From Auanema rhodensis (lineage: Eukaryota > Animalia > Nematoda), in contig OZ059897.1 in NCBI GenBank assembly GCA_964057225.1, positions 6,758,001 through 6,822,000 on the forward strand: a DNA stretch of 64,000 nt, in the 5' to 3' direction. Positions 26,823-41,229 of the stretch are shown here, in pieces. The notes under the pieces are model-generated. The model saw only the letters and a program-made list of their open reading frames with translations. It made no database searches and was not told the DNA's origin. Positions within the stretch are counted from its first letter, which is position 1, and every line of letters begins with the position of its first letter. Both the position numbers and the translations under genes were made by a program.

Positions 26823-28785
26823 TCAGATAAGCTTATGCTTTCTTTTCTTTTGAAATGGTGATGAGGTAGATGCTGGACATTGTTGATTAGCATTATTCAA
26901 GATTGAATTCTTGTATCTGTTATAGAGTGGTAAGATGAATTCAGATTTAGCTGTTTCCCAAGCTCTGAAAAAATAAGTTTTACAGGTTTATGAAAAAAGG
27001 TTGAAAAGTTTAAAAATAAGTTCTAACCTGTCACGGATACCAAGAACATCTTTATTACTTTCCACTTCTTCTTCAATTGAATTGTATCGTGAATCAGAAA
27101 TAAGTTTCAATGAGATACTCATTGCTTCTGAAAATTAAGAAAAAAAGAGATTTTTGATCTTCTCGGTGATCGAAAAAAAAGTTTCAAATACCTTCAACGA
27201 CAGCTCGGACATGAGTGGCAATGTTGTTAGTATCTTGACCACATCTAGCGATTGCTTGCTGCATAATATTGACCCAAACCTATAGTGAAAAAAGTTTTTT
27301 TTCAATCAAAATTTGAAATTCAATACCTGGTCCTTCTCATCTACTGGTTCAGATATGTCAAAGTCTTTCTTAGCGGGCTGAACACTGTTAGGAATACCGG
27401 CAGCTCTGAATGGCTGTGGCTCAGATGTAATTGGTCCAAATCTGAAACGAATTATCACATAAATAAGGAAAAACAGATGAATGAGCTAATACCCAGATTC
27501 AGGGGCTGGTTGGAATGTTTCATGGGAAGGGATTTGAACAATATGAGCACTAGTATAAGCAGCAACAATGACTTCAATCATACCTTCTAATCCAAGAGCA
27601 TAACGACCCGTTTTGAAATGAACTAAAAGAAATAAAAAAATGTTAATTATATGTAATAAAGAGAAATAGAAGTAGAAGAAGAAAAAGAAGAAGAAGATAT
27701 TACCGATATTTCTTTCAAAAGCGTTTTTCAAAGTTTCTTTAGCAATTCGAGCATCTCGTCCAGCAACTGTGAAAACCTTTAAATAAATTCTTTAATTTCT
27801 CTGTAATCTAAGATCGAAGGTTAATTGGTTATGAAATGACGAAAGGTGAATCTATTTCTTACACGTCTCGATATTTCTTTCAAGTGTTTGATCTTTTTTT
27901 TTATTTAAAAACATAAGATGAAAGGAAGGCTAACCTGGCGATCCTGTCTGGAGTTGACAATCAAGATGGTAGTATCACATACGGAGACATCCTACAATTA
28001 ATGAAAATCATTCGAGTATTTTTGACGATTACAAATTTTTTTCAATTTAATTATAATAAAAATATTTAAAATATATTTCATTTTCTGGTATGTTATACTC
28101 CCTCAGGGCAGTAGTAACAAAAAAAATTGACTATTGATATGCAAGTTGGAAGAACCTGTTTTGAGTGAAGTGCTAGTTTTCGAGTGAAAGTTTGAAATAG
28201 GTCAATCTTGTGTCACTTTCTATCACTACACTACATTTGGAAAAATCATTAAATGATTCGAATGTTAAGAAAAGCAATTTGATTTTCTTAAAATTAACCT
28301 GGAAATTCTGGTAACGACGTTTGAGGTTGTTTGCAAACTTTTCAATATCAACTGGAGCTCCAGGAATATTACCAATCTTGTCCACAATGGCTATGATTAT
28401 CTGTAATTGTGTGGATGAATGTGTTGTCAATCTGTCATATTCTGAATAATCCAGTCTATATATTCACATCATACTCACTTCCATATTCTTTTCTGGTTGT
28501 AGAACACAGGCTGGAGAAGTGTTACGAATACCACGAGTTACAGCTTGAAGCTGGAAGCAAAAATCTATGAAACCACAAGGTTTTGGACAATGCCAGTACC
28601 TGATTAACCTTATTAACAAGGTTTCCTCTTTCTTCATCAGTTATAACAGCTGATGGATCACATACTGGTGATGGAAGAGCAAGTCGACAGGATAATGGGT
28701 CCAGACGTGGATCAGGATAGGTTTGTGAAGTGAATTGTGAATATACAGAAGGAATGAGAAGACAAATAAAAGTAATTATAATCAT
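26823..28785 (-). CDS. MOLO-1-like (TPM-domain) secreted protein with no predicted transmembrane segment
   Basis: Signal peptide MIIITFICLLIPSVYS, then the MOLO1-family N-terminal pattern QFTSQTYPDPRLDPLSCRL..VCDPSAVITDEER. Ten phase-compatible exons lead through CDTTILIVNSRQDRQVFTVAG..FKTGRYALGLEGMIE to KKRKHKLI*. Confidence 0.8.
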
Positions 28786-29528
28786 AATAATCTGAAAAAT
28801 AATAAAATTTCTTTGAAAAAACATAATTAAAATGAGAATGAAAAGATTATTCAAGCTTTATGAAGTTTGATGACAGCTGTTGTAGCCATTTCAAGTAGGC
28901 TAATCTTTGGCATAAAACAGGTCAAACTGGATTTATTTTTTGAAAAAATAATTAATTTATAGTTGAACTATTAAAATAATTAGAAATAATCATTGAAAAT
29001 TAAATAAACATATATTAAAAGGTTGAAGAACTCTAATTTCATCTATTCAAAATGATTTTTGATATGGGTTGGCAGTGGATGAAAGGAGAATAGAAGGAGG
29101 AGGACAAGCTAAAAGCTTACATAATACTGAACATAAGCTTATAAGATAAATAGGAAAAAAACGAATATTTAGATAAGAAAGAAAAATTTGAAAAAGGAGA
29201 TCGAAGATGATCAATATGAATTTCTTTTGATGAATAAAACGATTTTCTATACATCGTCGTTCAACCTTCTCGTTGGATATAGTTGGTTGAAGAGAGGAGG
29301 GACATACAAGATAATGAGATGAACAGAGAGAGAGAAATAGAGAAAAAAGATAAAGAGAGAGAGAGCGAGAAAGAAAATTGTAAAGAGAGAGAGTGAAAAA
29401 GCGAAGAGACTGTATGAACATTTAGAGAGAATAAGAGAATGATATCAATAAAGATTTGATTTTATAGTTAATGATCTCTTCTTCTAAAACTGTAGGATAC
29501 CACCGAGGTGGAGTGAAAAGAACATGGG

Positions 29529-30259
29529 ATGAAAGGTGATAATGATAGATGTGGATTAGGTGTAGCTCAAATAGGTTTTGTTGGAACATCTTTTGGAATA
29601 TCAGATGCTGTATGCTCACTAGTATTCGGACCATTAATCAAACTTTTTGGACGAATGCCATTATTTGTTTTTGGAGCAGTTGTTAATCTATTGATGCTTC
29701 TAACGTTAATGGTAATAGATAGATATAGGTCGCTTAAGAAACTTCTTAATGCAACTGAATCTTAGATTTGGCCTGTAAATCCAGCTGATACTGCGATCTT
29801 CTACGTTGTAGCATGTGTGTGGGGAATGGCCGACGGAGTTTGGAATACACAAATCAGTGGTATATCTTTGAAGAACAATGAAAAACAGTTTCAACCCAAT
29901 TATCTAGGATATTGGGTAGCTCTTGTTGGTCGACAATCATTAGATTTTGCATTCACTAAGTATCGCCTGTGGGAGTCATTTGGAATGGCTCTAGGTTTCG
30001 TGATGATGAGATTAGTATCTGTTCAAGTGTACCTGTACATCTCAACAGGATTTCTATTATTTGGAATGGCTGGCTATACAATTATAGAGAATTATGATAA
30101 ACTCATGGTAAACTCATGACATATATGCTGCAATAAGTTTAAAAACAATACAAATTTCAGTCATACATCACACAAATGTTTGGTGTTTGCATTCCAAGTC
30201 CAAGAAAACAAGCTGTTATATCGATGGATCAATCACTTTTGAGTCATACTACAGAGTAA
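29529..30259 (+). pseudogene. 5'-truncated unc-93 duplicate with an in-frame novel ATG (potential 191-aa product)
   Basis: Exons 29529-29711, 29766-29859, 29908-30107 and 30161-30259 total 576 nt, open from MKGDNDRCGLGVAQIG to ..LLSHTTE*. Expression is unknown. Confidence 0.6.
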
Positions 30260-30510
30260 TATCTGTTTCAAAACTTTTGTTGCAAATGTTTTTTTTTAAA
30301 ATTAAAATTATACGGGTTTAACTTATATATAATTACATATATAGTTATAATATTATTAATATTATTATATATTTTATAATAAAATTTTTGTATTTTTATT
30401 TTGAAACATTGTATAATGCTTCTATAATATTGTCTTAACTAACGATCTCTGTTGAACTAATTTTGACAAAAAAAAATTTCGAGAACGACACATAGATGAA
30501 CTCAAACTAA
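29548..30510 (+). repeat. Left arm of a 963-bp inverted duplication of the unc-93 3' end (exons, introns and 3' flank)
   Basis: Reverse complement of 31906-32868. Paired coordinates sum to 62416 at both ends and at the internal ORFs (29817/32599), so there is no net indel. The mirrored ORFs in the track translate identically. Confidence 0.97.
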
Positions 30511-30688
30511 TGGGATGAAACAGAGCGTGTCAATCAATTGACGTGACGATATTCAGATATTCAGCACGATTCGGTCTACAGATCTTGCTGATCCACGAGA
30601 AAATCTAGCAAGTTTGAGTAAAATTCTGATGACAAAAGGAGATTTGGGTTTTCAAATAACATCATCAATAATAGGTAAAATGCCGTTC

Positions 30689-30863
30689 TAACGCACCTTT
30701 TCGCCATCCTCAATTTCTGTATTTTCAAGCCATTTTAAGGCTTATTTTCATTTATTTTGTGTCTCAACTGTTCGAAAATGTCTCATTTTTAACAATTTTC
30801 AAAAATGACCAAAAGGTCGAAATGAGAGAAAAACTATGGTCGAAATGGTCGAAAAGTGCGCTA
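30689..30863. mobile_element. Possible decayed MITE (imperfect terminal inverted repeats, TA ends)
   Basis: TAACGCACCTTTTCGCCAT (30689-30707) versus ATGGTCGAAAAGTGCGCTA (30845-30863); GGTCGAAA is repeated internally. Confidence 0.3.
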
Positions 30864-31565
30864 ACAATTTTGGATAAAAATACACTATTAAAAGACAAAA
30901 TTTGTGAAATATCTGAAGCCATTAACCAACTATGAAATCGAAAAGCTTGTTAATGTGTTAGAAATCAAAAATTTTCATGTAATCTTTATGAGAGACACAG
31001 AAATACCCTCCACTCATACCCTCCACTCATAAGCAACTTGGGGGCCGAAAGGTCTAATGGAAAATTTCGCGATTCATATACATAAAATAAAGACAATATA
31101 CACATCATTAAATCAGATATGGCGAACGTTGATGACATGGGCTTGCTGGATGAGAACTCGATTCTTGCGGAGAATGTGAGCGGGGATGAAGTGTTAGAGG
31201 AAAGGGGTGATGGTGATGGGGATCGTGGTGAGATTGGATTATTCAACAATTATTCAAAGAAAAGAAATCATAAATTACTTATTTGACTGATCTTTTCTCA
31301 AACAAGAGTGATATATTCTTTAAGGATTTCGATTCCCTCAGCGAATAGTATACCTTTTTGATCCAATTTTGAATTAAGTTCCCATTGAACGATGCACTCT
31401 TTTCCAATTTTCAGCTTTTTTTTGAACGTAATTTCCTAATAAAACACTCATTATATTCATATTACAAAAAATAACACATATCTTAACCAAGCCCGAAAAT
31501 CGTCCTAAATTCATCTTCAGCTCAGCAACCAAACTCATCGCAGTCTTTGGACGATTGATTCCTTT

Positions 31566-31668
31566 TAAGGCAACCGAGTTATCAATGAATTCAGACCGGA
31601 AGTTCACGACAAATAAAGAAGTTGTCGTGAACTTCCGGTCAGAATTCATTGATAACTCGGTTGCCTTA
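31566..31668. repeat. Near-perfect hairpin: 47-bp stem (one A-A mismatch), 9-nt loop
   Basis: TAAGGCAACCGAGTTATCAATGAATTCAGACCGGAAGTTCACGACAA (31566-31612), loop ATAAAGAAG, then the reverse-complement arm at 31622-31668. The mismatch is at 31593/31641. Confidence 0.95.
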
Positions 31669-31905
31669 GAAGGGCTCAATCTCCCTCTCGTTGAAGCCAA
31701 TATTTTCAGCATTCAGATCACCCAATCCGAGAATTTGAGCCAACAGAGATAACTAGATGATAATGATTCACAGCAATGAACTTACTAGAAATACTACAAA
31801 TACAAGTATTTGTATTGCGAATCAGTACTTTTATTTTGAAATTTAAGTTTCCTATGAACATGATCGAATTATATATTTACAAATTTTTGGAGATTTTGGG
31901 AGTTG

Positions 31906-32868
31906 TTAGTTTGAGTTCATCTATGTGTCGTTCTCGAAATTTTTTTTTGTCAAAATTAGTTCAACAGAGATCGTTAGTTAAGACAATATTATAGAAGCAT
32001 TATACAATGTTTCAAAATAAAAATACAAAAATTTTATTATAAAATATATAATAATATTAATAATATTATAACTATATATGTAATTATATATAAGTTAAAC
32101 CCGTATAATTTTAATTTAAAAAAAAAACATTTGCAACAAAAGTTTTGAAACAGATATTACTCTGTAGTATGACTCAAAAGTGATTGATCCATCGATATAA
32201 CAGCTTGTTTTCTTGGACTTGGAATGCAAACACCAAACATTTGTGTGATGTATGACTGAAATTTGTATTGTTTTTAAACTTATTGCAGCATATATGTCAT
32301 GAGTTTACCATGAGTTTATCATAATTCTCTATAATTGTATAGCCAGCCATTCCAAATAATAGAAATCCTGTTGAGATGTACAGGTACACTTGAACAGATA
32401 CTAATCTCATCATCACGAAACCTAGAGCCATTCCAAATGACTCCCACAGGCGATACTTAGTGAATGCAAAATCTAATGATTGTCGACCAACAAGAGCTAC
32501 CCAATATCCTAGATAATTGGGTTGAAACTGTTTTTCATTGTTCTTCAAAGATATACCACTGATTTGTGTATTCCAAACTCCGTCGGCCATTCCCCACACA
32601 CATGCTACAACGTAGAAGATCGCAGTATCAGCTGGATTTACAGGCCAAATCTAAGATTCAGTTGCATTAAGAAGTTTCTTAAGCGACCTATATCTATCTA
32701 TTACCATTAACGTTAGAAGCATCAATAGATTAACAACTGCTCCAAAAACAAATAATGGCATTCGTCCAAAAAGTTTGATTAATGGTCCGAATACTAGTGA
32801 GCATACAGCATCTGATATTCCAAAAGATGTTCCAACAAAACCTATTTGAGCTACACCTAATCCACATC
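31906..32868 (-). repeat. Right (source) arm of the inverted duplication: native unc-93 3' exons and 3' flank
   Basis: Continues seamlessly into the upstream unc-93 exons, whereas the left arm breaks mid-exon at 29548. Confidence 0.95.
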
Positions 32869-33227
32869 CAACAAATGCCTTAAATTATATTGAATTAATT
32901 TGATAAAAATCTCACTGTAATAGCATACTTTAGTGAATAATCCAACGAAAAATGCTTTTCCAATCCCATTAAACATAGTTAACGGTACTAAGAGCATTAC
33001 CCGTATACTTTTAAAGTTTTTCCAAGTTAATTGTAGAATTAAAGGATTAAATTGAGGAGCTTTGTTTCTAAATTTAATTCAAATTCACTGAATTACTAGT
33101 TAAGCTTACCTGTTCATTACATCTTTTGTTAAAGCATTTAAGAACATAGATAAGATCATAACAGCTACTACAGCACAGGCAAGATATGCCAAACAAACTA
33201 AAATGCAAATCATAATAAGTTCTTTCA

Positions 33228-33258
<31 letters not shown>

Positions 33259-35568
33259 GCTCTCTCTCTCTCTCTTTCACTCTTTTTTCTCTCTTTATCT
33301 ATATCTGTGGTAATCTTACCAGCTACTAAAACTCTTTCAGGTGGTCGTTTCAAGTTTTCTGTAGCTCTGGTCGATAAATCTGTCGCATTCATTGGAAACA
33401 TATGACCACATCTGGAAGAAAAATAACATTTTAAATTATTTTAAGAAGCAAAAAATGCTTTTCGTACGTTTTATCAACGGCATCTTCAATATCATATTGA
33501 CGAATTGCAGCTGTAAGTATACTTGATGATAAAAAGTTTCCAATTACTTGTCCTAAGTGAACAATCATTGAGAAATATCCGAAAAACCTGTAAAATCACT
33601 AATTATTCAGAAATTTGCTATAATAATTTTTTTTTAATTTCAATATCGATGAATTGAATGCATATAGAATATGATGTTACCGGAAAATTACAGCGTTTGG
33701 CGATTCATAGTTGATTTTCGCATATTTAAGGCCCATTTCAATGATATAAGCACACTCAGCTCCCCACAGACAAGAACCAGCTGCTCCCAAAAGAACTGAC
33801 ACAGGAATCATTGAAAAATAACTGAAACAAACGTGATTTGAGAAAGAAATAAGAAAAAAACTGAGCATGACCCATGTATAATAGGAACATTTTGATTGGA
33901 AAAAAGTATTTGCATACAACCGCTCTGCTCGTCAATATTTTCAAAAGCAAACATGGTTCACGTAAGGTTCACGTGGTTTTTAATTTGAAATGTTCACGTG
34001 TAAAATTTACAAAAAATCAACTTTTTTAAGTAAAAATGTGAAAAGAAATAAGAAACTTACGTGGGACGTATATTAACACTCATATAAATAACATAAACAC
34101 ACATAGCACTAATTAGTGTAAGTTTACATCCCAAACGATTAATCATGAATGTTGGAATGAACAGTGAAGATATGGCTAATGTTACATACATCACTCTATA
34201 ATATATAATATTGAAAATATATAATATAGTTAAGAGATATACACTAAACTATCAGCTCCAAGTTCAGCATTGATTGTTGTTTGTAAATTTTGTAATCCAT
34301 TAAAAGCGGTGAATAAAAATAGGAATGATAATGAAATAATCCATAAGTTAGCCTAAATATAGATGATATAGTTAAAGTTTTATATATTGAGAGTAATAAT
34401 TGTGATTCAATGGTACCTTTATCTTTTGCATTGTCTTCATATTTCTACGACGTTCAGCTGGAGTTTCTTGGGCTATTCGTCTTTTTCGAATAATTTTCTT
34501 TACAAATTCTTGACTATAACATGATAAGCTTTAGTTAGAAAAGCATTTAAAGATCAACCTGTAGACATTAGCATCAAGAGTAGTATCATGATCAACACTA
34601 CTCATGAGAGATTGCATTGTGACAAGACGATCACGACGATTAACGCGACGACGACTCCCATGCACAGGGCAGTAAGGATCATATTCAGGTAGTCGCTCTT
34701 TCTAAATTTTTAATTTTACATGATCAGGGAAAATTTGGAAGAATGATAAAGAGAACAAGAGAGAGAGAGAGGGAGAAAGAGAGAGTTAAATAGAGAGGAA
34801 GATATATGAAGAAAGGGATATAGAGAAATAATGTGTGTATTTACTTCAGTTGGACATTCCATTTTCAAATCGTCCTCTATTGATGGTCCACGGAATAAAT
34901 AACTACTAAAAACATATAAATATTATAATTTATCATTAAAGTATCAAGATATATACCATTTTTCTGGTTTTACATCACTTGGATGTTTCTTGATTCGTCC
35001 AATTTCTCGAAATGAGAATGGTTTTTGTGTTTGAAAATACTCTTTAGGTCTAAAAATATATAATTTTTTTCAACTGTATCTATTATAATCAATATAACTC
35101 TACATTATACAATATTCTGTTAATGGAAGTTCCTGTATGTCTAGTGTTCGGATCAGCAGAGTCGGAGTGTCTTTTCTCTTTGAAATTGCTCCAATTTTTT
35201 GCAGAACATTCATGGATACTTTACGTAATGAATCAAGTGCAGGTGATCTGAATAATAATATATTATCAGTAATTTGGTATGCTATATGCTATGTGATTGC
35301 TATGCTTACTAACTTGCTTCGTCGTTTTCTTTCACGCTCTTGGTGGTGTCGTTCAACTTCTTCCGCTAATTCGACTTTGCCTAGACCTAAGGCTTGCAAA
35401 TCAGCTTCATCGAGTCCCAAGACAATCTGAGATAAAAAGAAGATTCATATTTTGTTCTCGTTGTTGATTGGAAACCTCAGAATCAACTCTACTTGTACGT
35501 GATGGAGACTTTGAGCGACGAGTCGTTCGCTCATTCTCCATCATGTCCCAGGCATTCGAATCGGCCAT
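32157..35568 (-). CDS. unc-93: UNC-93, MFS-like regulatory subunit of the SUP-9 two-pore K+ channel
   Basis: Long charged N-terminus MADSNAWDMMENERTTRRSKSPSR..YDPYCPVHGSRRRVNRRDRLVTMQSLMSS, then the UNC-93 core NLWIISLSFLFLFTAFNGLQNLQTTINAELG..FFGYFSMIVHLGQVIGN..FNGIGKAFFVGLFTK..VWGMADGVWNTQI..YRLWESFG. Stop at 32157. Confidence 0.92.
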
Positions 35569-37753
35569 GTTTTCCTTCTGATTCTACTCGTTGTCGCCGT
35601 CGTCGTTGTCGTAAAAGTGTACGTAGTTGTTTTTCAAATGATCGACGCAAGACTGAGTTCAAAGAATCGGTGTACAGTGTGGAATTTCAAACATATTCAG
35701 TAATGGAGTGAATCTAAAATTAAATAGGAACAACAGGTTACAATGAAAACAATAACATATAATTAGATATATACATATATTATAATTATATAAGTATATG
35801 TATATAAAAGAAAAAGAAAAAAAGCAACTAATTGGATCATTTAAACTTTTTTTTTCATATAAACAACATAACGAATAAAATTCAAACAATAGATTCTATT
35901 CTTACCGTTTTACTATTAGTTAGAATTACTAAGAGAATTAACTATATGTATATGTAATGATAATATATAATATTATATAGTATATAACAATTATTTTCAA
36001 AAGATATATATCCATTGAGCTATACTATCAAACTGCTGAAGTGCACAATGACATGGCTGAACAGATATACGAACACGATATACGAGATATGTTAGCAAAA
36101 ACGTTTAGAAATTAGAAGATTGAAAAAAGAAAATGAGCAAGAAATAAGGGTGGGAGGTGAACGAGGCGTAACCTACGAAATTCGAAAATCAGTGCTAGCT
36201 AAGAGACGAGCAGGCCGGCGATAGAGATGAAGAAGCTTTAAGGTTGTACAACACACAAATCCAAGACATTGGCAGATTGTGATGCGAAGCTCAGAGAGAA
36301 ACAGCTGGTTGATGATTCTACCTCTCTATATCCATCTTTCTATCTCATTCAGTCTTTATGTCCTATATCCTCCTGCTTCGACCTGATCTATCCCTTTACG
36401 TAATGATATGTGTAAATTCAAAGTTTCTCGATATTCTGTAATATAAGTCTTTATAAAGATAAATGACATATAAAGCTTATTATTAAATATTTATAATCAA
36501 TTTCTATAGAAAATAATAATTTTTATAAAAATAATAATATTAGTTTTAGAAACAAATGATCTTTGATAATATTTTTAAATTTCCATTACACATAAAAGAA
36601 AAAATAAAAATTTATGTTTTTTCAGATAATCATTTGGAACGGCGATTAAGCTTTTCTTCATCATCATCATCTTCTTCTTCTTTCAAATTTTTATATTTGA
36701 ACTAATTTATATTGGAGTTCGTAAGCAATTACCCTGTATGAATAGCCTGAATAGTTTAAGTTTTTACTCTCATTTCTAAGTTGTTCTTTTAAGTTTTGAA
36801 AAAAATAACCTCCCAATATGTTCTTTAATATTATAATGAAATAATTGTTAATATATTATGTATTATTACGAATGAAATGTAAATTGTCTCTCGATTACCT
36901 ACCTAATACTAGCGTAACTGTAATCAGTCAATTCTCGTGTCTCTATCTAGTTTCTATATTCATCTAGAACCAGATTTAGCTATAAGAAAATGGCATCAGC
37001 ACACATTAACTATATGTTATATGTGTATTGTCTTCTCACACAAATTATCAGACTGATCAGCTTGTTAAAATCTTGATCATTATACTGTTAGACTTACTTA
37101 CTCTTATTATTTCATCAGTCATAAAAATGTTTGTAAAAGAATGTGAAGAATGAACAACTTGGAATGGAGAAAGGTAGAGAGATAGAGATAGAGAGAGAAA
37201 GAAAGAGAGAGAGAGAATGAAAGAAAAAGAGAGAGAGAAAAAAAAGAGAAAGAGATGTCTACATACTGACTAATCCATCAAAAAATGGAATTATGTATGA
37301 GCCAAGGAGCTGGTCATGTGAGAATTGAAGAAAAAAACAAATAAATCAGATTAATTGTTGTCTTTTTGTCGTTTTTTTCACTAACTTCGACCAAATTAAT
37401 TCGATCGGATGAAAAAAATGGAATTGAGGAATCGACTAATTGGCTACAGTATCAGTTTGAAAAACTGCTGGAACATCATCATTACCATCATCATCATCAA
37501 GCATGTCTTAGTGACGATCAGCATCATATTCTCTTTTTTACATGATTGTCTAATAAACAATGAAAGGAAGAACGTGTTCCCATTAATCATCTGAAGTCAA
37601 AACAGCAGCAGCCAGCCTCTTCATGACGCCCAACGGCACTACTTGCTCGACTTGCCGGTTCAGCCCCCTTTTTCCTCCAGTGCCCATCCATACTTCACTC
37701 CTAATCAGTCTACCTATTCCAGCTGGTCAGCAACTACTACTCCTATTTCAATT

Positions 37754-38651
37754 ATGAGTCAAACACTCAAATATGTCCTCATTTCCTCATTACTGTTCAT
37801 GTTTTTCCATTTTACCTATCCAGCTCAAATGCAATGTCATTGTGATGAGTATACACTGTGTTTGAATGTGACCCATTGGCATGCTAAGCATCAGTTTGCT
37901 CGATGTCAACGTCGTTGTGAGGTAGGCTTATATCGCATCTTTTCCGATTTTTATGTCAAAAATTATAATTTTGCAGAAGAAAATGGTTGATTCTATTCGT
38001 AAAGTACCAAAAGAATATATGAAATGTTTGAAAGAATTTGATAATGTCTTCACCAGAGTCATGAAATGTACTACAAAGCATCTTGGATTTGGGTATTCTA
38101 TTCTATATAATTAACCTCAAATATACAAATATTTTCTTAAAGTTGCACAAATAGCAAACATAATACTGTTGGAAACAAAGATTTATCTGCATATTATGAT
38201 ATGATTAACGATCGTTGGTCAGGTTATATGAAGAATAAGAGTATGTATATCATTTCTCTTAACTATATACATATAATTATTAAGGTATTGCTCTTATATA
38301 TAAAACAACTGAAGCAAAAGACTTTAATACATGTCTATTTGATTGTTTCCATCCTTCTGTTAATACCTGTACTGAGCGATTAGGGTAAGTTACAAGTCGA
38401 CATTTCATCTGAAATTTCATATCTTGTTGCAGATGTGGATTGTTAGCTCCAAAAGATAAACTTTTATTAGATGTTTTAACTGAATGTGGATCAAAAGCTG
38501 ATGTTACCGAAGAAATATTTGTTAAAGTTTTAAAATGTCTAAGTAAGTTTCAACTTTCTTCCAACCTTATCTAAACTCTAAATAATATTTAGATATTGTT
38601 ATGGAAGATGATCCAAATGCAAAAGATAATGAATATGAATACGAGTACTAA
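37754..38651 (+). CDS. Secreted Cys-rich protein, divergent PERM-2/PERM-4 (vitelline-layer) family-like
   Basis: Signal peptide, then QMQCHCDEYTLC..CQRRC..KCL..MKCT..GCT..FNTCLFDC..CTERLGCGLLAPKDKLLLDVLTECG. The Cys spacing matches my recollection of the QCxC...C..LGCGLxxPxD family pattern. Six exons, ending DNEYEYEY*. Confidence 0.7.
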
Positions 38652-38794: not shown

Positions 38795-40202
38795 TTATAT
38801 AATTAAATGATCTTTTATCATAGAAATTTGATCATCATGAGTTTTATGGAAGGTTTGATCATGGTTATATTCTGTGAAAACCTTTTCGCCTGTTTGTCCC
38901 GGAATTTGAGTTGTAATCTGAAAACAAAAACAGAATAACATGATAGTTCTTAATGTGTTTATGCTTCAACTATAAAGCAAATAAGTACTAAGCGTTAGAT
39001 GCTCAAGCATAAGTTCGAAATAAATTCAAGCTGTAAACGTACTTTGTCACAAACTTTGTATCCAACAATTTGATCTTTTGTCGAGTAAACAGAAAAGACA
39101 TAACGTCCTTCATAATTAGTTACACTGTTAATATCCTGAAATAAATTTTATATTAATTTTTAAATTTTTTATTAAAATCAATTAAACCTGAAGATATTCG
39201 CTTTCTTGTGGACATACTCCAGAATACAGTCCAGTGACTTGATTACAGATTGGAATAATACTCAATACACATCCTGGAATAGCTACTCCTCCAACCTAAA
39301 ACAAAAACTTGGTTTAACAAAACTTTTCATATAGTATTTTTGACCTGAAGGCTGATACCGTGGTTTGGTCCGGCAGTTCCAACAAAGGTGTCGACAAACT
39401 TAGTCAAAGGTCCTCCAAGATACTCTCCAGTATCAACACATCTTCCTGCATTTATTAATTGAATAATCAAATAAAATGTAAAAGAAAGTCCAAAAAATTA
39501 AAGTTTTTAAAGATAATATGTTTAAAACTTGAAAAAAAACTCTAAAAAGAAAACTAGTAAAATTCATTACCTCCTAAGATTGCTTTACGGGAAACTGGAA
39601 CTCCAAGAGAAAATGAGACAACATCAACAGCTCTTCCGGTGTACAAACGGACGGCAACAATCAAAGCACGAACCTTTAAGTATGTTTCGTTAAAAAAACA
39701 AGAAAAATCCTTTTATTTCACTTGTTTAACGTATTCGCATCTCATGCTGTATTCAACCCACTTTACAGGATTTCCTTGAGCGCCATTGAAATATGTGGTC
39801 GAGTACAATTCACTATCTCGATAACCTTTTGTCCTGAACATAACAATCATATTAACGTGTTTTGGAGAGAAAATATTTGAAAAGGATGAATATACTTGAA
39901 GTAATTAGCGGCTTCTCTCATCTTTTCTCCTGCTGTATCTGATACTCCATGAACGAACACGACAGGTTGATTGATAATACGGTCAGAACTATGCTTCTTT
40001 CCTCCAAAAGATCCTCCTCTACCGAGGTCTTTTCTTAAATAAAATGAAATTATTAAGCTTCACGAAGTTGAGAAAGTTACCGTTCCATCTGATCTCGAAC
40101 CTCAGGTCCATAGTAGCTTTCTAACCACTTAGAGAAATCTTCGGAATAGCTAGCTGATACGACAGCTAGTAATGTTGTCAGACAGAATAATCGAACAAAC
40201 AT
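38795..40202 (-). CDS. Secreted class-2 lipase (nematode lips / Lipase_2 family)
   Basis: MFVRLFCLTTLLAVVSA signal; DLGRGGSFGG..PVVFVHG..GYRDSELYSTTY..VDVVSFSLGVPVSRKAILGGRCVDTGEYLGGPLT..AGPNHG..KDQIVG..NHD, giving Ser/Asp/His triad candidates. Confidence 0.93.
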
Positions 40203-41229
40203 TTCATAAATTATAAAACCTCAAGTAGTATATTGGAAATCAGTTAGTGATGTTGAAATTGTTTGCTAGAGCAGAAAATATGAAAATGAAACAAGAGCTG
40301 TGAATTGTGAAGCCTACAGTTAGGTGGATAGATACAAGTGAAAGCGATTGGATAATAGATTAGGAACAAGCATATCTCCAAGAAATGTGAGCCAAAATCA
40401 TGAATCAACTGTTTGACAAGAAAATCGAAAATCTATTCAATTTTATTAGTTATTATGGAAGAAAAAAGAGAAAAGTGTGTGAAACATAGCGAGAATGCTT
40501 GATAGTTTGACCACAAGTTTCTATATGTTCATAGATGCAACGTAAGTTCAGCATGAAGACGATAAAAGCGTTGAAAATGAAAAAGAAGAATAAGATGAAG
40601 AAGGATAGCTATACGACTGGTTCTTTGTAGATGTCTGTCAAAATTTCAGATGAGCCGTAGAAGTAACAATAGCCATATAAGAACCTGAGAATAGGATAAG
40701 AATGAGATATGTATGTATGAAAGTAGAAAGATAGGATATATTCAAAAGAGAGAAAAGAGAAAGTTAGAAAGAAAAAGATAGATGAAGAGAAAATGAATGA
40801 AAGCGAATCATCATGATTCTTCTCCTCCTCTACCACCATCTCCCCCCCCCCCCACCTTAGGATCACGACGGAAACCGGATAAGTTGATAGGGGTCAAAAT
40901 CATTGAAATACATCTATCAGCATATTAACTAATTGATGTAGAAACCTCTTATGCATACCTTGAAATCGTTTTCCCTTTTCCTCTTGATCTCTTTCGTACT
41001 CTCGTCATTTCTATAGTCTTACTTTCTATTTTTCTCTGTATTCTTAATATGTTCTCTCCGTTTTCATTCGATTTTTTTCTATTTGAATACATTACCCCTT
41101 CCCTTCTCTCTCTCTCTCTCCCCCTCTCTTTCTTTCTTTATTTCAAGAATTTTCTATAAATATTTTCAAATTTAAATTATTTTTCATAAAATTTATTTAG
41201 CGAACATTATTAAATAAAATTCATTTTTT

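What the first reader, a model, noticed from the sequence alone, without database searches (positions are those of the whole stretch)
29548..32868. Apparently perfect 963-bp inverted duplication of the unc-93 3' end: a candidate natural hairpin-RNAi locus
Seen: 29548-30510 mirrors 31906-32868 with no net indel, includes introns (so the copy was DNA-mediated, not a retrocopy), and faces the parent gene tail-to-tail across a 1395-bp spacer. Established: long fold-back RNA is a Dicer/ADAR substrate in nematodes, and UNC-93 regulates the SUP-9 K+ channel in muscle. Inference: read-through of unc-93 transcription across the spacer would form a stem of up to about 1 kb, giving endogenous siRNA or edited RNA that auto-regulates unc-93. 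The identity of the arms implies a very recent event, ongoing conversion, or an artefact.
Basis: partly seen in the sequence, partly recalled or inferred. Interest (0 to 1): 0.85.

Follow-up and report, generated by a model that had tools for sequence, protein, structure and literature searches.

The report
Young inverted copy of worm gene
The last quarter of a worm muscle gene (unc-93) was recently copied backwards into a DNA break 1.4 kb downstream; this is a known kind of young gene duplicate, and the limited RNA evidence shows no hairpin RNA that would silence the gene.

Summary
The repeat is in the sequence: 29548-30510 mirrors 31906-32868 over 963 bp, with one mismatch. The minus-strand copy is the end of an intact 18-exon, 711-aa unc-93 gene, 85% identical to Auanema sp. 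JU1783. The plus-strand copy is a 5'-truncated daughter with three introns.

An 11-bp direct repeat and a 13-nt filler bracket the daughter. This marks a DNA-templated insertion at a break, and the syntenic outgroup locus lacks it. Adjacent inverted partial duplicates of about 1 kb are the commonest newborn duplicates in C. elegans. Another note of this scan saw the same scar here; none was found on other DNA.

The hairpin-RNAi reading is weak. The antisense arm starts 1.5 kb past the predicted poly(A) site, beyond usual worm Pol II run-on. Four probable RNA runs hold 0.23-0.24 of the words; the mature mRNA alone predicts 0.24 and read-through 0.64-0.78. unc-93 nulls look wild-type in C. elegans.

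The junction also creates an in-frame ATG for a 191-aa C-terminal fragment; its expression is untested.

The parts
32157..35568 (-). Intact parent unc-93 gene, 18 coding exons, 711 aa
   Evidence: Spliced alignment to P0225: no internal stop, 85% identity to Auanema sp. JU1783, 58% to C. elegans UNC-93
31906..32868 (-). Donor arm: starts 10 nt into exon 15, then exons 16-18, three introns, stop, 3' UTR and about 110 nt beyond the predicted cleavage site
29548..30510 (+). Daughter arm: inverted 963-bp copy, one mismatch at 30298
29524..29534 (+). Left copy of the 11-bp direct repeat ATGGGATGAAA (target-site-like duplication)
   Evidence: only two copies in the window; chance 0.0004-0.0009 for random 963-nt segments
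30510..30520 (+). Right copy of the 11-bp repeat; its first base is shared with the arm end (1-nt microhomology)
29535..29547 (+). 13-nt filler between the left repeat and the daughter; no exact template in the window
   Evidence: best nearby match 12/13 at 31755, judged chance level
30511..31905 (.). 1395-bp spacer, single-copy in the window; inferred to have been contiguous with the left flank before the insertion
31553..31681 (.). Small palindrome in the spacer: 60-bp arms, 93% complementary, 9-nt loop; unrelated to unc-93
   Evidence: z -17.9; no Rfam family at its gathering score
32033..32038 (-). Predicted poly(A) signal AATAAA of the parent, inside the donor arm (mirror at 30378-30383 on +)
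   Evidence: predicted from sequence, 3' end not mapped
29529..30259 (+). Potential daughter ORF: ATG inside the left repeat, 7 new residues, then parent residues 528-711 (191 aa if spliced like the parent)
   Evidence: expression untested, exon-1 product not in the protein collection
26840..28785 (-). Downstream MOLO1-family gene; its 3' splice acceptor (28792) lies about 740 bp from the insertion; low end approximate
   Evidence: Pfam MOLO1 E 3e-11; syntenic with L009

Best explanation
A real, very young partial inverted gene duplicate made by break repair or replication template switching, with little or no regulatory effect. Steps: (1) a staggered break or stalled fork at the 11-bp site about 2.5 kb downstream of the unc-93 poly(A) signal in today's coordinates [inferred from the repeat]; (2) the left end gained 13 filler bases and primed on the opposite strand of the nearby unc-93 3' end [filler shown, priming inferred]; (3) 963 bases of genomic DNA, introns included, were copied [shown]; (4) synthesis returned to the original site through 1 nt of microhomology, duplicating 10-11 bp [repeat shown; polymerase theta or microhomology-mediated break-induced replication inferred]. 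The parent stays intact and is cleaved at its own poly(A) site, so at most a small tail of polymerases reaches the antisense arm. The copy is tolerated as near-neutral.
For: Junction anatomy, chance 0.0004-0.0009. Parent intact. The syntenic Auanema sp. JU1783 locus (lipase, unc-93, MOLO1) has 600 bp from stop to MOLO1 ATG and no inverted copy; three more distant rhabditids also lack it. One difference in 963 bp, divergence at most 0.6%. Newborn C. elegans duplicates are mostly adjacent and inverted, median span 1.4 kb, 21-38% partial (PMC4546093, PMC2728529, PMC3449122). Templated inserts and microhomology are polymerase theta hallmarks in worms (PMC7368036); 200-4000 bp templated insertions were seen in a C. 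elegans repair mutant (PMC8078821). RNA word share 0.23-0.24 against 0.24 expected for mRNA alone. unc-93 nulls have no visible phenotype in C. elegans (PMC2762039).
Against: No read was laid on the junctions. The best DNA runs hold 0.97-0.98 of the words, as an allele without the insertion would (0.973-0.978), so presence in those samples is not shown. RNA evidence is from assembled contigs of runs only guessed to be RNA, which drop rare RNAs. The fit at 0.24 assumes distinct words were counted; by position the expectation is 0.31. The repair enzyme is inferred.
Confidence: 0.72

Rival explanations
1. A functional cis hairpin-RNA locus. Polymerases that escape the unc-93 poly(A) site, or an antisense transcript started in the spacer such as a long MOLO1 outron, give RNA that pairs with unc-93 exons 15-18 and the 3' UTR. 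This RNA is diced or edited and lowers unc-93.
For: The geometry allows duplex blocks of 164, 94, 200 and about 241 bp. Low Pol II levels reach 2 kb past poly(A) sites, and heat shock raises downstream transcription and dsRNA (PMC6453478). C. elegans makes low-level Dicer siRNAs from hairpin loci (bioRxiv 10.1101/2024.02.15.580610). Some fly hpRNAs are born next to their parent gene (PMC10317233).
Against: The arm starts 1.5 kb past the predicted cleavage site, with two more AATAAA in the spacer on the transcribed strand (31830, 30751). The RNA share excludes abundant read-through (0.24 against 0.64-0.78) and an abundant unspliced antisense arm (0.34-0.47). unc-93 and MOLO1 are not neighbours outside Auanema, so no conserved operon forces read-through. 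There are no compensatory changes, and the target has a wild-type null phenotype in C. elegans.
Confidence: 0.08
2. An expressed partial duplicate with a recruited start. Divergent transcription from the MOLO1-family promoter runs into the daughter on the plus strand, uses the junction-made ATG at 29529 and the copied poly(A) signal, and makes a 191-aa C-terminal membrane fragment of UNC-93.
For: In-frame ATG, open frame, intact introns and AATAAA in the copy. The daughter lies head-to-head about 740 bp from the MOLO1 acceptor. Partial duplicates with recruitment are common in C. elegans.
Against: An in-frame ATG can arise by chance, and an intact frame is expected in so young a copy. There is no TTTCAG/TTTTAG trans-splice acceptor on the plus strand upstream. 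The exon-1 product is not in the protein collection, but neither is any other protein of this locus. Its RNA would be almost identical to the parent's, so word shares cannot show it.
Confidence: 0.1
3. Assembly or library artefact: the insertion is absent from the animals.
For: Near-identical arms. Best DNA word shares (0.97-0.98) fall in the range of an empty-site allele (0.956-0.987) and at or below that of a filled allele with no other loss (0.982-1.0). No direct read test.
Against: A target-site-like repeat plus filler is not what fold-back chimeras or missing-adapter reads leave (own knowledge). If the window is from the published A. rhodense assembly, that was unamplified HiFi at about 236x in gene-rich DNA (bioRxiv 10.64898/2026.08.27.747507); this source is not confirmed. 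Shares vary 0.96-0.98 between runs of one study and the stretch holds two (AG)n tracts, so background loss is as large as the signal.
Confidence: 0.08
4. Transposon gene capture (Pack-MULE, Helitron, non-LTR copy of pre-mRNA) or an inversion of the spacer with staggered breaks.
For: A 9-11 bp target duplication is typical of Mutator elements, and staggered inversions leave inverted duplicates (own knowledge).
Against: The insert has no terminal inverted repeats, poly(A) tail or element sequence: it is filler plus unc-93 DNA. The direct repeat joins left flank and spacer in the same orientation, so the spacer was not flipped.
Confidence: 0.02

Closest known systems
Newborn (Ks about 0) adjacent inverted partial gene duplicates of C. 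elegans (Katju and Lynch class; cited in PMC4546093, PMC2728529, PMC3449122)
   Same: DNA-mediated, partial, adjacent, inverted, about 1 kb, essentially no divergence, possible recruited start.
   Different: Found in Auanema; the junction scar is still fully readable.
Templated insertions by polymerase theta end joining or template switching in C. elegans (PMC7368036, PMC8078821)
   Same: Local donor, short filler at one junction, 1-nt microhomology at the other.
   Different: The insert is long (963 bp), its donor is 1.4-2.3 kb from the site, and the site is duplicated by 10-11 bp rather than deleted. The enzyme is not shown.
Drosophila de novo hpRNAs such as Dsim-hp58 (PMC10317233) and C. 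elegans 23H-RNA hairpin loci (bioRxiv 10.1101/2024.02.15.580610)
   Same: An inverted repeat made of a gene fragment near its parent gene.
   Different: There both arms lie in one defined transcript with Dicer-dependent siRNAs. Here one arm is the parent gene itself, its poly(A) signal lies between the coding stem halves, the loop is 1.4 kb, and no transcript or siRNA is shown.

Membership tests
Young adjacent inverted partial gene duplicate | Copy of part of one gene, parent intact | tested here: met
   parent 711 aa intact; copy covers residues 528-711
Young adjacent inverted partial gene duplicate | DNA-mediated (introns and flank kept) | tested here: met
   three introns and about 110 nt past the predicted cleavage site
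Young adjacent inverted partial gene duplicate | Adjacent, inverted, near-zero divergence | tested here: met
Young adjacent inverted partial gene duplicate | Derived copy absent from an outgroup | tested here: met
   L009-L012 have no such copy
Young adjacent inverted partial gene duplicate | Present in the animals (junction reads) | tested here: inconclusive
Templated insertion at a break (polymerase theta / template switch) | Filler, microhomology and flanking duplication at the junctions | tested here: met
Templated insertion at a break (polymerase theta / template switch) | Dependence on polymerase theta | not testable with these tools
   needs genetics
Hairpin RNA (hpRNA / 23H) locus | Long inverted repeat | tested here: met
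Hairpin RNA (hpRNA / 23H) locus | One transcript spans both arms | tested here: inconclusive
   Not seen at contig level: share 0.23-0.24 against 0.64-0.78 expected; rare or nascent RNA would be missed
Hairpin RNA (hpRNA / 23H) locus | Dicer-dependent siRNAs or A-to-I editing over the stem | not testable with these tools
   no small-RNA or raw RNA reads offered
Hairpin RNA (hpRNA / 23H) locus | Target rises when the hairpin or Dicer is lost | not testable with these tools
   needs an experiment
Pack-MULE or other transposon capture | Terminal inverted repeats or element ends inside the target duplication | tested here: not met
   insert is filler plus unc-93 DNA only
Retrocopy | Introns lost, poly(A) tail | tested here: not met

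The most novel reading that the evidence does not exclude
A nematode hairpin-RNA locus caught at birth. A single break-repair event, with its scar intact, placed an antisense copy where read-through (perhaps under stress) yields siRNA or edited RNA that measurably lowers the parent unc-93, with an empty allele available in other strains as a natural control.
Probability: 0.08. Interest if true: 0.6.

Novelty: new member of a known kind. Interest (0 to 1): 0.2.

Why it matters
As it stands it is a tidy example of how the common inverted newborn duplicates of nematodes can arise, because the donor, the filler and the duplicated target site are all readable. It would matter more if siRNAs or a truncated UNC-93 product were shown. 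Then a filled and an empty allele would allow a direct test of whether a new inverted duplicate silences its parent from the first day.

Tried and rejected
They were masked in local DNA comparisons from then on; local scripts that read the whole window file covered them without printing them, as did the ORF list (no translations).

Exact protein look-ups of 18 ORFs of the locus, two of them spanning the left junction: none in the collection. No protein of this species appeared in three homologue searches. Empty-site and filled-junction patterns in metagenome contigs: none. Non-coding alignment of the outgroup intergenic DNA to the spacer: not significant; only a weak match to the proximal MOLO1 upstream region (p about 0.02).

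A spacer ORF (30892-31029) resembled a Maverick protease start from memory; Pfam and the Atlas gave nothing and it was too short for the locus search, so this is unsupported. A conserved unc-93/MOLO1 operon was rejected beyond Auanema. Retrocopy, Pack-MULE and spacer inversion were rejected on anatomy. The spliced models were built only inside scripts; searches were run exon by exon by reference and the joined search was left out. Katju and Lynch 2003 itself is not held and is cited through later papers.

Full report
Observation. The arms are as described: 29548-30510 on the plus strand equals the reverse complement of 31906-32868, 963 bp, no indel, 1395 bp apart. There is one mismatch, at 30298/32118, where a T run meets an A run. 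Nothing else of this length repeats in the window apart from microsatellites and a 129-bp palindrome inside the spacer.

Parent and daughter. A spliced alignment with the UNC-93 of Auanema sp. JU1783 (P0225) gives an intact minus-strand gene at 35568-32157: 18 exons, 711 aa, no internal stop, 85% identical to P0225 and 58% to C. elegans UNC-93. The copied stretch begins 10 nt into exon 15. It holds exons 16-18, introns of 54, 48 and 53 nt, the stop, the 3' UTR with AATAAA at 32033-32038, and about 110 nt beyond the predicted cleavage site. The plus-strand arm has no upstream exons, so it is the daughter. Introns and flank make it a DNA-level copy.

Organism and outgroups. The Auanema sp. JU1783 locus has the same order (lipase, unc-93, MOLO1-family gene, one strand), is collinear over 18 kb, has 600 bp from the unc-93 stop to the MOLO1 start, and has no inverted copy. 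In the window that distance is about 3.4 kb, or 2.4 kb without the insertion. The genus is therefore well supported. The species A. rhodense comes from unchecked scan notes; run sizes and years fit its 2019 and 2023 data sets, but I did not prove it. In Caenorhabditis auriculariae, Diploscapter and Necator the downstream neighbour is not MOLO1 and there is no such copy.

The scar. An 11-bp word lies at 29524-29534 and again at 30510-30520, and nowhere else in the window. Between the left copy and the arm are 13 bases with no exact template in the window, and the arm's last base is shared with the right copy. Random 963-nt segments have such a flanking repeat in 0.04-0.09% of cases. Removing filler, arm and one repeat leaves a clean empty site, so the spacer was contiguous with the left flank and was not flipped. 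I found this; the scan's note s1-418673 on the same stretch says the same. The simplest history is a staggered break or stalled fork, a switch to the opposite strand of the unc-93 end 1.4-2.3 kb away, 963 nt of synthesis, and a return to the original site. Fillers, templated inserts and microhomology are polymerase theta hallmarks in C. elegans, and templated insertions of 200-4000 bp occur in a repair mutant. The enzyme here is inferred. One difference in 963 bp puts divergence below 0.6%; gene conversion could also keep the arms alike.

Is it in the animals? Nine DNA runs in three studies hold 84-98% of the sampled words, which shows the sequence exists but not the junctions. An empty-site allele would still hold 97.3-97.8%, and the ranges for empty and filled alleles overlap the observed 0.97-0.98 once ordinary losses are allowed. 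Protein look-ups and metagenome patterns for the junctions were blank. Against an artefact stand the scar itself and, if the source is the published assembly, unamplified HiFi at about 236x. I give the artefact 0.08. A strain-private or lab-arisen event is part of the main reading.

The hairpin idea. A transcript must pass the parent's poly(A) signal and run 1.5 kb to reach the antisense arm, 1.76 kb to reach antisense coding sequence and 2.47 kb to finish it. It must also pass two more AATAAA on that strand in the spacer. In C. elegans most Pol II stops about 1 kb past the poly(A) site, with low levels to 2 kb. Cleavage at that site separates the mRNA from the downstream RNA (established knowledge). 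Four probable RNA runs hold 0.23-0.24 of the words of 28900-33600. The mature mRNA ending just after the AATAAA predicts 0.24 by distinct words (0.31 by position). Read-through over the spacer predicts 0.64-0.66, full read-through 0.72-0.78, and mRNA plus an unspliced antisense arm 0.34-0.47. So there is no abundant read-through or antisense RNA in these data, and unc-93 mRNA appears present. Contigs drop rare RNA and the runs are only guessed to be RNA, so a low-level duplex remains possible, especially under heat stress. Known hairpin-RNA loci have both arms in one defined transcript and give Dicer-dependent siRNAs; neither is shown here. unc-93 nulls have no visible phenotype in C. elegans, so silencing would be cheap to tolerate and of little evident use.

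A further possibility. The junction puts an ATG (29529) in frame with exon 15, giving a 191-aa ORF: seven new residues, then parent residues 528-711, with introns and poly(A) signal intact. The daughter is head-to-head with the MOLO1-family gene, about 740 bp from its acceptor. Divergent promoter activity could express it, but there is no plus-strand trans-splice acceptor and no evidence of expression.

Comparison and verdict. Newborn C. elegans duplicates are mostly adjacent and inverted, median span 1.4 kb, and 21-38% are partial. This locus meets every feature of that class that could be tested, apart from read confirmation. It is a new member of a known kind, with a well-preserved scar. 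Confidence: near-neutral young duplicate 0.72, expressed truncated ORF 0.10, functional hairpin 0.08, artefact 0.08, transposon or inversion 0.02. Interest 0.2. The joined spliced models were used only inside scripts; database searches went exon by exon by reference.

Noticed in passing
window 31553-31681: Palindrome with 60-bp arms and a 9-nt loop (z -17.9), only 340-470 nt past the predicted unc-93 poly(A) site, so within normal Pol II run-on. It is a likelier dsRNA source than the long stem but has no unc-93 complement; it might also have stalled a fork. Only sub-threshold miRNA-like Rfam hits.
   Followed up: partly
window 30892-31029 (+): 46-residue open stretch in the spacer that from memory resembles the start of a Maverick/Polinton protease; Pfam and the Atlas gave no support.
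   Followed up: partly
window 31119-31286 (+): 55-aa acidic ORF in the spacer, no Pfam hit, not in the protein collection; the spacer is 35% GC against 29% in the left flank and may be an older decayed insertion.
   Followed up: partly
window 31003-31028: Exact 13-bp tandem duplication in the spacer.
   Followed up: no
window 38800-40220 (-) and L009 2210-10897: Order lipase (Lipase_2), unc-93, MOLO1-family is shared with Auanema sp. JU1783; the unc-93/MOLO1 adjacency is absent in three other rhabditids.
   Followed up: yes
window 37750-38550 (-) and L009 3577-4380: Conserved coding-like stretch between the lipase gene and unc-93 that is not among the called genes of the outgroup record.
   Followed up: no
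protein P0018 (Ostertagia ostertagi, KAK6030976.1): A partial UNC-93 model that matches exon 15 twice; possibly a tandem duplication or an assembly error in that genome.
   Followed up: no
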